The notes beneath the pieces were generated by a model. It searched no databases and was not told the DNA's origin. It worked only from the letters and a program-made list of their open reading frames with translations. Of a stretch of 64,000 nucleotides of DNA, positions 24,941-26,320 are shown piece after piece. Source of the stretch: Podarcis filfolensis (lineage: Eukaryota). The DNA is taken from the NCBI GenBank assembly GCA_964270895.1, contig OZ185438.1; one strand, written 5' to 3'. A program made the position numbers and the translations under genes. Within the stretch, counting starts at the first letter, position 1, and each line of letters opens with the position of its first letter.

Positions 24941-25183
24941 AGAAGAGTTTGGATTTGATATCCCGCTTTATCACTACCCGAAGGAGTCTCAAAGCGGCTA
25001 ACATTCTCCTTTCCCTTCCTCCCCCACAACAAACACTCTGTGAGGTGAGTGGGGCTGAGAGACTTCAAAGAAGTGTGACTGGCCCAAAGTCACCCAGCAG
25101 CTGCATGTGGAGGAGCAGGGAATCGAACCCGGTTCACCAGATTATGAGTCTACCGCTCTTAACCACCACACCACACTGCCTCT
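24941..25183 (-). mobile_element. tRNA-derived SINE (Squam2/Anolis SINE2-like), copy A, sense to NALCN
   Basis: Head GAGAGGCAGTGTGGTGTGGTGGTTAAGAG, B-box GGTTCGATTCCC, tail gcgggatatcaaatccaaactcttct; reverse complement of 26064-26305. Confidence 0.9.
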
Positions 25184-25335
25184 CTCATTACAGGCAATGA
25201 ACCGCACAGGCTTTGAATTCAAATGCTTCATTTGCCTCCAACACCTAAGTGTTTCAATACATTGGTAAGCACACAGTAGGACTAAGCAAGAATTCACACA
25301 CCTCAAAGAGAATTTTAAAAATTAGCAACATCTAC

Positions 25336-25440
25336 CTGTGTCGTAGCTGTCGAAGTTGTACTGCTCCTGGATCCCCACATCTGTTGGAACTGCACTCGGA
25401 TTTCAGCAAATGTCTCAATGATGACAGCAATAAATACATT
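25336..25440 (-). CDS. NALCN: NALCN coding exon (human exon 9 equivalent), 105 bp, phase 0-0; end of domain I S6
   Basis: [35 protein letters not shown], identical to the recalled human sequence. Acceptor tctttttgtag|; donor CAG|gtagat. Confidence 0.98.
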
Positions 25441-25454
25441 CTACAAAAAGAATA

Positions 25455-25482
25455 ATATATATATATATATATATATATATAT
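25455..25482. repeat. (AT)14 microsatellite in the 159-bp intron 8
   Basis: Read directly from sequence. Confidence 0.95.
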
Positions 25483-25599
25483 TTAAAAACAGAAGTTTAC
25501 AGTGAAACGCAGAGGTGGAAGCAGTGGGTGGGTGGGGGAGTCCCACTCCAACATGCTTTATATTCTGATCAGGTGTGTGTCTGATCAGGTCTACAGTAC

Positions 25600-25742
25600 C
25601 TTAACAAGCCAAGCAAGGAAGAAAATTAAGGTGATGAAATAGAAGTAAGATCGCCATCGGGGGAAGCTGTCGATTGCTCGGTACATCAGGAAGACCCAGC
25701 CTTCTTGAGAAGCAGCTTCGTAAACAGTAAAGATGCTTGTAC
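25600..25742 (-). CDS. NALCN: NALCN coding exon (human exon 8 equivalent), 143 bp, phase 1-0; domain I pore helices, selectivity-filter Glu (SQEGW) and S6
   Basis: (G)[47 protein letters not shown]. Acceptor ccatttacag|; donor AAG|gtactg. Confidence 0.98.
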
Positions 25743-26063
25743 CTGTAAATGGAAAATAAAATACATATGCAGTGCAAATTAAAAGGAGCATTTTCAAATA
25801 CCAGCAGTCAACACTCCTTTCCTTCATTTTCCTTTCTTGCCATTAAACAAGCCTCTATGCAAAAAAGAGAGCCAACAAGAGTTTTCTATTATTTTTATGA
25901 TTAGCATTCAGCCGTTGCAATATTACAAAGCAAAACATTTGATCCCTGAAGACATATGCATGTATGTGTGGGTGTGTTCAAAGCGCATAAATAGCCATGA
26001 CCAGAATATGCTGCCCTTCTTCCTAAGAAGGGTAGTGTGGTGAGAGCCAGTGAGAGCCACACT

Positions 26064-26320
26064 GAGAGCCAGTGTGGTGTAGTGGTTAAGAGTGGTAGTC
26101 ACGTAATCTGGGGAACCGGGTTTGCGTCTCCGCTCCTCCACATGCAGCTGCTGGGTGACCTTGGGCCAGTCACACTTCTTTGAAGTCTCTCAGCCCCACT
26201 CACCTCACAGAGTGTTTGTTGTGGGGGAGGAAGGGAAAGGAGAATGTTAGCCGCTTTGAGACTCCTGAAGGGGAGTGAAAGGCGGGATATCAAATCCAAA
26301 CTCTTTCTCTTTCTCTTTCT
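26064..26320 (+). mobile_element. tRNA-derived SINE (Squam2/Anolis SINE2-like), copy B, antisense to NALCN
   Basis: GAGAGCCAGTGTGGTGTAGTGGTTAAGAG head, (CTCTTT)n tail; core 26132-26266 matches copy A 24982-25116 in reverse at 134/135. Confidence 0.9.

What the first reader, a model, noticed from the sequence alone, without database searches (positions are those of the whole stretch)
24941..26320. Inverted SINE pair tightly brackets the pore exons 8-9: candidate circRNA/dsRNA switch
Seen: SINE B (plus) lies about 320 bp upstream of exon 8 and SINE A (minus) about 150 bp downstream of exon 9. Positions 26132-26266 and 24982-25116 are reverse complements at 134/135, and the one mismatch is a G-U wobble in the pre-mRNA. 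The loop holds exons 8+9 (248 nt, frameshifting if skipped), including the domain I filter glutamate. Established: flanking inverted SINEs drive back-splicing and exon skipping and recruit ADAR/DHX9 in mammals. Inference: a lineage-specific circNALCN(8,9) and/or NMD-coupled control of leak current built from two unrelated insertions.
Basis: partly seen in the sequence, partly recalled or inferred. Interest (0 to 1): 0.7.

Follow-up and report, generated by a model that had tools for sequence, protein, structure and literature searches.

The report
Inverted SINE pair around NALCN exons
Two copies of a common lizard SINE sit in opposite orientation in the introns on either side of two pore-coding exons of the NALCN sodium-leak channel gene and could pair in the pre-mRNA, but this arrangement is ordinary and the available RNA data could not show whether it has any effect.

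Summary
NALCN lies on the minus strand. Exon '8' is 25742-25600 (143 nt, aa 267-314, with filter glutamate E280). Exon '9' is 25440-25336 (105 nt, aa 315-349).

Two tRNA-derived SINEs, fitting the published description of Squam3B, lie 322 nt upstream and 152 nt downstream in opposite orientation. They are 92% alike over 243 nt, and the core is 134/135 with the one mismatch a G-U in the pre-mRNA. RNAfold pairs the arms across the exons (227 bp, one 137-bp run).

Skipping the 248 nt would give a stop codon three codons into exon 10.

The functional reading stays untested. The two RNA runs I could lay gave zero reads on these exons, so they had no power.

The arrangement is not rare:
- about 460 close inverted pairs of this family are expected per genome;
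- four other cross-exon inverted repeat pairs lie in this same window;
- the scan has already noted several such pairs on other DNA of this genome.

DNA contigs of two other organism labels (about 99.4% and 97% alike) show the pair is shared. Most likely it is a neutral dsRNA-forming pair that gives at most low-level by-product circles, skipping or editing, not a switch.

The parts
26064..26305 (+). SINE B. It lies in intron '7', 322 nt upstream of exon '8', and is antisense to NALCN. It is tRNA-derived and Squam3B-like. A possible 5' extension covers 26030-26063, and a CT-rich tail runs to about 26322.
   Evidence: blastn and alignment; tail and flanks read
24943..25184 (-). SINE A. It lies in intron '9', 152 nt downstream of exon '9', and is sense to NALCN. 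Its head keeps a tRNA-like fold.
   Evidence: ARAGORN tRNA-like at 25107-25180; Rfam tRNA 24.3 bits, below the threshold of 29
26132..26266 (.). Near-perfect core arm of SINE B (134/135 against 24982-25116)
   Evidence: part of the 137-bp uninterrupted helix in RNAfold
24982..25116 (.). Near-perfect core arm of SINE A
25600..25742 (-). NALCN exon '8', 143 nt, aa 267-314: domain I pore loop with E280 and the start of S6
25441..25599 (-). Intron '8', 159 nt, with a (TA)n run just before the exon '9' acceptor
25336..25440 (-). NALCN exon '9', 105 nt, aa 315-349
23985..24071 (-). NALCN exon '10', 87 nt, aa 350-378. Intron '9' is only 1,264 nt.
58445..58599 (-). NALCN exon '7', 155 nt, aa 215-267. 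Intron '7' is 32,702 nt and holds the N run 27449-27595.

Best explanation
Shown: two separate insertions of one abundant, young, tRNA-derived SINE landed in opposite orientation in the introns on either side of two constitutive-looking NALCN exons. The family fits the published Squam3B description. The primary transcript therefore carries two 243-nt stretches that can form a very stable duplex, closing an 879-nt loop that holds exons '8' and '9'.

Inferred from mammalian work: the duplex brings the exon 9 donor and the exon 8 acceptor together. A small share of transcripts may therefore back-splice into a 248-nt circle or skip both exons, which gives a premature stop and probably decay. The duplex is also a likely substrate for A-to-I editing and RNA helicases.

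My reading: this is a tolerated, essentially neutral by-product of SINE spread in a long, intron-rich gene. It is not an evolved control of leak current.
For: - Geometry and identity.
- NALCN identity of the four exons.
- Fold: the arms pair across the exons, 227 bp in all with a 137-bp run; duplex energy is about -454 kcal/mol against about -85 for each arm folded alone.
- No other copy of this SINE within 64 kb could compete for pairing.
- The downstream arm is transcribed before the exon 10 acceptor, because intron 9 is 1,264 nt.
- Skipping gives G|ATG TTT CAT GA..., read as GAT GTT TCA TGA.
- The family description fits Squam3B: 238 nt, tRNA head, (CTT)n tail, and 31,440 full-length copies at 88% mean similarity in Podarcis muralis.
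- Ordinariness: about 460 close inverted pairs are expected per genome; four other cross-exon inverted repeat pairs of 240 nt or more lie in this window; other notes of the same kind exist in this genome.
- The pair is present in two other organism labels, about 99.4% and about 97% alike in the unique flanks. It is therefore tolerated in a gene whose loss is severe.
- Literature: most TE-driven circRNAs are young by-products (PMC8516420). Inverted Alu pairs also flank 23,540 constitutive exons (PMC13019027).
Against: - There is no RNA evidence at all. Runs X23 and X24 had zero depth on exons 8, 9 and 10, so neither linear nor circular products were seen.
- It is not certain that these runs come from the species of the window.
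- The reads tool silently drops human-like reads, and these exons encode residues identical to the human protein.
- The uneven identity (core 1/135, head 12/68, tail 6/39) is not explained by simple neutral decay. It leaves room for gene conversion, selection on pairing, or assembly polishing.
- The Squam3B assignment rests on a published description, not on an alignment to a consensus.
Confidence: 0.6

Rival explanations
1. One reading: the pair is a working switch. Regulated pairing (through ADAR, DHX9 or other dsRNA-binding proteins) diverts NALCN pre-mRNA into a circNALCN(8,9) and/or into an NMD-targeted transcript lacking exons 8-9, and so tunes leak current in this lineage.
For: The geometry is very favourable:
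- a 137-bp perfect helix that is close to both splice sites and has no competing copy;
- a short downstream intron, which is a feature of skippable exons with inverted Alu pairs (PMC13019027);
- weak-looking donors at exons 7, 8 and 9 (gtctgt, gtactg, gtagat);
- a core that is far better conserved between the arms than the rest of the element;
- a pair kept in at least two organism labels.
Against: - No RNA evidence.
- The arrangement is expected by chance many times per genome and is repeatedly seen in this genome.
- The general finding is that such circRNAs are low-level noise (PMC8516420).
- Sharing across 3% divergence is also what neutrality predicts.
- The core identity has simpler explanations.
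Confidence: 0.05
2. The pair is inert. In the cell the duplex is prevented or undone by co-transcriptional splicing, hnRNPs, helicases or editing, and exons 8-9 are spliced constitutively with no measurable circle or skipping.
For: - Hundreds of thousands of inverted Alu pairs flank constitutive human exons (PMC13019027).
- HNRNPC, ILF2 and ILF3 modulate Alu duplex effects (PMC13019944).
- A follow-up of a similar MITE pair in this genome reported normal inclusion (note s1-312103; unchecked).
- NALCN is under strong constraint: the exon 8 and 9 products are 100% identical to human.
Against: A 137-bp perfect helix closing a loop under 1 kb is at the strong end of known pairs. Even 30-40 nt repeats are said to support circularisation in minigenes; this last point is from my own knowledge, not checked here.
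Confidence: 0.3
3. The near-perfect core is not original. Either it was homogenised after insertion by gene conversion between the two close inverted copies, or the assembly pulled both cores towards the family consensus during polishing. The pairing strength would then be partly secondary or partly an artefact.
For: - Differences are very unevenly spread: 18 of 107 positions in head plus tail against 1 of 135 in the core (Fisher p = 2e-6). The contrast holds for non-CpG substitutions too (p = 0.006).
- SINE A predates a split with 3% divergence, so about 4 core mismatches were expected and 1 is seen (P = 0.09).
- Short-read contigs of other individuals break within 25-36 nt of the SINE edges, so they cannot confirm the core letters.
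Against: - Two sub-subfamilies that share a body but differ in the head would give the same pattern.
- Half of the head differences are at CpG sites.
- The expectation test alone is not significant.
Confidence: 0.2
4. Protective pairing. The antisense SINE B carries a complete cryptic 61-nt exon with a consensus GTGAGT donor. Pairing with SINE A buries both cryptic splice sites inside the helix and so keeps this frame-breaking exon out of NALCN mRNA.
For: The cryptic acceptor (ccccttcag|G at 26265/26264) and donor (GAG|GTGAGT at 26204/26203) both lie inside the 137-bp helix, 26130-26266. The real donors nearby look weaker.
Against: - This is pure inference.
- The upstream SINE is transcribed about 1.1 kb before its partner.
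- Every antisense copy of the family carries the same motif, and most have no partner.
- There are no RNA data.
Confidence: 0.08

Closest known systems
Inverted Alu (reverse-complementary match) pairs flanking circRNA-forming exons in mammals
   Same: Two copies of a young SINE lie in opposite orientation in the two flanking introns. A strong duplex is predicted, the upstream intron is long, and the exons are canonical in a long, GC-poor (41.5% GC), intron-rich neuronal gene (PMC8516420).
   Different: The SINE family is different (tRNA-derived, Squam3B-like, in a lizard). The downstream intron is short (1,264 nt). No back-splice junction has been observed. The known human circNALCN (hsa_circ_0099761) is made of exons 2-7, not 8-9 (PMC8194043).
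Loop-out exon skipping by inverted Alu pairs (TBXT AluY/AluSx1 type)
   Same: An inverted SINE pair brackets the exons, and the downstream intron is short, which is the feature that sets apart skippable exons with inverted pairs (PMC13019027; PMC10901737; PMC13019944; PMC2533698).
   Different: Here skipping would not give a new protein form. It gives a frameshift with a stop three codons into exon 10. No skipped transcript has been seen.
Squam3B SINE of Lacertidae (Ther1/MIR-derived)
   Same: tRNA-like head, body, about 240 nt without the tail, a CT-rich tail on one copy, high copy number, and about 90% similarity between copies.
   Different: The resemblance of the core to MIR/CORE is from memory only. 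Copy A has no simple-repeat tail.

Membership tests
NALCN (sodium leak channel) | Sequence identity to solved NALCN structures over the exons in question | tested here: met
   Exon by exon, by reference: 47/47 and 35/35 identical to human residues 268-314 and 315-349. The neighbouring exons match residues 216-266 and 350-378.
Inverted-repeat-flanked circRNA locus | Reverse-complementary repeats in both flanking introns, able to pair across the exons | tested here: met
   243 nt at 92%, core 134/135. The RNAfold MFE structure pairs the arms.
Inverted-repeat-flanked circRNA locus | Canonical acceptor before the first exon and donor after the last exon of the circle | tested here: met
   tttacag|GTA at 25742 and CAG|gtagat at 25336
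Inverted-repeat-flanked circRNA locus | Back-splice junction reads (exon 9 donor joined to exon 8 acceptor) | tested here: inconclusive
   Two bulk RNA-seq runs were laid. Depth was zero on exons 8, 9 and 10, and no 'go back' joint was seen. Linear reads were absent too, so the test had no power.
Inverted-repeat-flanked circRNA locus | RNase R resistance and lack of a poly(A) tail in the product | not testable with these tools
   Needs bench work
Loop-out exon skipping by an inverted SINE pair | Transcripts joining exon 7 to exon 10 | tested here: inconclusive
   No reads on exon 10. Exon 7 lies 32.7 kb away, outside the stretch that could be laid.
Loop-out exon skipping by an inverted SINE pair | Short downstream intron and weak exon definition | tested here: met
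   Intron 9 is 1,264 nt. The donors gtactg and gtagat depart from GTRAGT. Splice-site strength was not scored with a model.
ADAR-edited intronic dsRNA | Clustered A-to-G changes in RNA reads of the arms against the same individual's DNA | not testable with these tools
   Thousands of reads from other copies of the family pile on the arms, and none is anchored in the unique flanks.
Squam3B SINE | tRNA-derived head with promoter boxes | tested here: met
   ARAGORN calls 25107-25180 (-) tRNA-like. The Rfam tRNA score is 24.3 bits, below the threshold of 29. The head of copy B is too decayed to be called.
Squam3B SINE | About 238 nt without the tail, and a (CTT)n tail | tested here: inconclusive
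   243 nt aligned between the copies. Copy B ends in a CTTT/CT-rich run, and copy A has no tail (PMC7983390).
Squam3B SINE | Alignment to the family consensus, including the 11-nt insertion typical of 3B | not tested

The most novel reading that the evidence does not exclude
The near-identity of the 135-nt core, set against 15-18% divergence in the rest of the two elements, is actively kept (by gene conversion, by selection for pairing, or both). It would be kept because the duplex matters for NALCN processing in lacertid neurons, either as a brake that diverts transcripts into a circle or an NMD target, or as a mask over the strong cryptic exon in the antisense SINE. This would be a SINE-built dsRNA element under selection in a non-mammalian ion-channel gene.
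Probability: 0.05. Interest if true: 0.6.

Novelty: new member of a known kind. Interest (0 to 1): 0.25.

Why it matters
If the pair did act, it would be a clean non-mammalian case of transposon-built RNA structure shaping the output of an essential, deeply conserved channel gene. It would also extend to squamate SINEs the Alu-centred picture of circRNA formation and loop-out skipping. As it stands, it is one more example of a common arrangement. Its main value is as a well-defined test locus: short loop, perfect helix, no competing copies, and a frame-breaking outcome.

Tried and rejected
1. RNA evidence. The RNA runs had no reads on any unique part of the locus, so nothing can be said about back-splicing, skipping or editing. 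The single-cell runs X21 and X22 were not used, because such libraries are usually 3'-biased.
2. Editing in the SINEs cannot be judged. Reads from tens of thousands of other copies cover the arms.
3. Local duplication as the origin of the pair is rejected. Similarity stops at the SINE edges and the flanks are unrelated.
4. The G-U wobble is not a special feature. Any transition difference gives either G-U or A-C depending on the strand, so the odds are even.
5. The known human circNALCN is not the same circle. It holds exons 2-7.
6. Searches for circRNA work in lizards found nothing relevant.
7. I did not run the large protein searches, because the identity of the protein was not open.
8. The spliced model was searched exon by exon, by reference. 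The joined exons were only translated inside a script to check the frame and were never sent to a search.
The N run 27449-27595 was left alone.

Full report
**What is there**

The window holds part of the NALCN gene on the minus strand. I located five exons by reading stop-free stretches and their borders. I confirmed four of them, exon by exon and by reference, against solved NALCN structures:

| Exon | Coordinates | Residues | Match to human NALCN |
|---|---|---|---|
| '7' | 58599-58445 | aa 215-267 | 216-266 |
| '8' | 25742-25600 (143 nt) | aa 267-314 | 47/47 identical |
| '9' | 25440-25336 (105 nt) | aa 315-349 | 35/35 identical |
| '10' | 24071-23985 | aa 350-378 | 350-378 |

- Exon '11' is at 555-424; it was not checked against a structure.
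- The domain I filter glutamate E280 lies in exon '8'.
- Intron 7 is 32,702 nt and holds the N run 27449-27595. Intron 8 is 159 nt, intron 9 is 1,264 nt, and intron 10 is about 23.4 kb.
I did not verify them and define the exons by residues.
- The joined exons were translated only inside a script to check the frame.

- The two arms 24982-25116 and 26132-26266 are reverse complements at 134/135. The single mismatch (+ strand A at 25088 against C at 26160) is a U.G pair in the minus-strand transcript.
- The full repeat is 243 nt at 92% (24943-25184 against 26064-26305), with 879 nt between the arms.
- The upstream copy ends 322 nt before exon 8. The downstream copy starts 152 nt after exon 9.
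- Exons 8 and 9 make 248 nt. Joining exon 7 to exon 10 reads GAT GTT TCA TGA, a stop after three codons.

**What the repeats are**

- Both are copies of one tRNA-derived SINE. ARAGORN calls the head of the downstream copy tRNA-like, and Rfam's tRNA model scores it just under threshold.
- Three features fit the published description of Squam3B, the young Ther1/MIR-derived SINE of lacertids:
  - the length is about 240 nt;
  - one copy has a CT-rich tail;
  - the copies are about 90% alike.
- For Podarcis muralis the paper gives 31,440 full-length copies, 238 nt, 88% mean similarity and a (CTT)n tail (PMC7983390). I could not align to a consensus, so this is a fit to a description, not a proven membership.
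- Another note of this scan calls the genome a wall lizard's. I did not check this.
- The two copies are separate insertions. Similarity stops at the element edges, the heads differ at 12 of 68 positions, and the tails differ.

**Pairing potential**

- RNAfold of the 1,391-nt pre-mRNA stretch pairs the two arms across the exons: 227 base pairs, with one uninterrupted run of 137.
- The duplex energy is about -454 kcal/mol, against about -85 for each arm folded alone.
- No third copy of this SINE lies anywhere in the 64 kb, so nothing competes within the flanking introns.
- The downstream arm is transcribed before the exon 10 acceptor.

This is the architecture that favours back-splicing and loop-out skipping in mammals (PMC8516420; PMC13019027; PMC13019944; PMC2533698; PMC10901737). 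A short downstream intron is the one feature reported to set apart skippable exons with inverted Alu pairs, and it is present here.

**Is it more than chance?**

- Within this window, two copies so close and inverted have a probability of about 2%.
- With the published copy number, about 460 close inverted pairs of this family alone are expected per genome.
- The same window holds four other inverted repeat pairs of 240 nt or more that bracket NALCN exons at longer range.
- The scan has noted several inverted transposon pairs around exons elsewhere in this genome. One was followed up and judged ordinary.
- In humans, 232,493 Alu pairs flank 23,540 constitutive exons.

**RNA and comparative evidence**

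RNA:
- The one reads call laid two bulk RNA-seq runs and two DNA contig sets on 23800-27440.
- The RNA runs gave zero depth on exons 8, 9 and 10 and on all unique intron. Reads fell only on the repeats and came from other copies.
- The test therefore had no power. The sampled tissue may not express NALCN, the runs may be from another species, or conserved reads may have been dropped by the tool's filter.

DNA:
- Contigs of organism D (about 99.4% alike) run from unique DNA into both edges of SINE A and into the head edge of SINE B.
- Contigs of organism E (about 97% alike) enter both edges of SINE A and stop at both edges of SINE B.
- The pair is thus shared across about 3% divergence. It is tolerated and is not private to one species.

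**An unexplained detail**

- Differences between the copies are very unevenly spread: head 12/68, core 1/135, tail 6/39 (Fisher p = 2e-6).
- Half of the head differences are at CpG sites, but the contrast holds without them (p = 0.006).
- Possible causes are two source genes that differ in the head, gene conversion between the close inverted copies, or polishing of the assembly towards the family consensus. I could not tell these apart.

**Verdict**

The functional reading is untested, and prior knowledge is against a switch: most transposon-driven circles are low-level splicing noise (PMC8516420). The known human circNALCN is made of exons 2-7 (PMC8194043), so it gives no support for an 8-9 circle. 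I rate this a new member of a known kind, of modest interest.

Noticed in passing
window 26204-26264 (minus strand): The antisense SINE B carries a complete cryptic 61-nt exon (ccccttcag|GAG...GTGAG|GTGAGT). Its donor looks stronger than those of exons 7-9. Both cryptic sites lie inside the 137-bp helix, so pairing with SINE A would hide them.
   Followed up: partly
window 24943-25184 against 26064-26305: Identity between the two SINE copies is very uneven: head 12/68 differences, core 1/135, tail 6/39. Possible causes are gene conversion between close inverted copies, different source genes, or assembly polishing.
   Followed up: partly
window 11430-11722 / 46416-46704 / 61444-61735; 20171-20416 / 60380-60625: Other inverted repeat pairs, 246-293 nt at 94-95.5%, bracket exons 8-10 or 7-10 at long range. 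Several alternative circles are therefore conceivable in this gene.
   Followed up: no
window 23483-23855, 33539-33898, 35071-35427, 49421-49778: Four copies of a second SINE, about 370 nt and about 80% alike, all in the same orientation. One lies 130 nt after exon 10. The size fits Squam1/Sauria. Being direct repeats, they cannot pair.
   Followed up: no
window 25651: Contigs of both other organisms read G where the window has T. This is the third position of the Arg297 codon in exon 8 (CGA to CGC on the coding strand), so it is synonymous.
   Followed up: yes
window 26819-26873: The contig of organism D lacks these 55 nt of intron 7, an indel difference between individuals or close lineages.
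   Followed up: no
window 25443-25494: A (TA)n run sits directly in front of the pyrimidine tract of the exon 9 acceptor in the 159-nt intron 8. The reads tool skipped it as a repeat.
   Followed up: no
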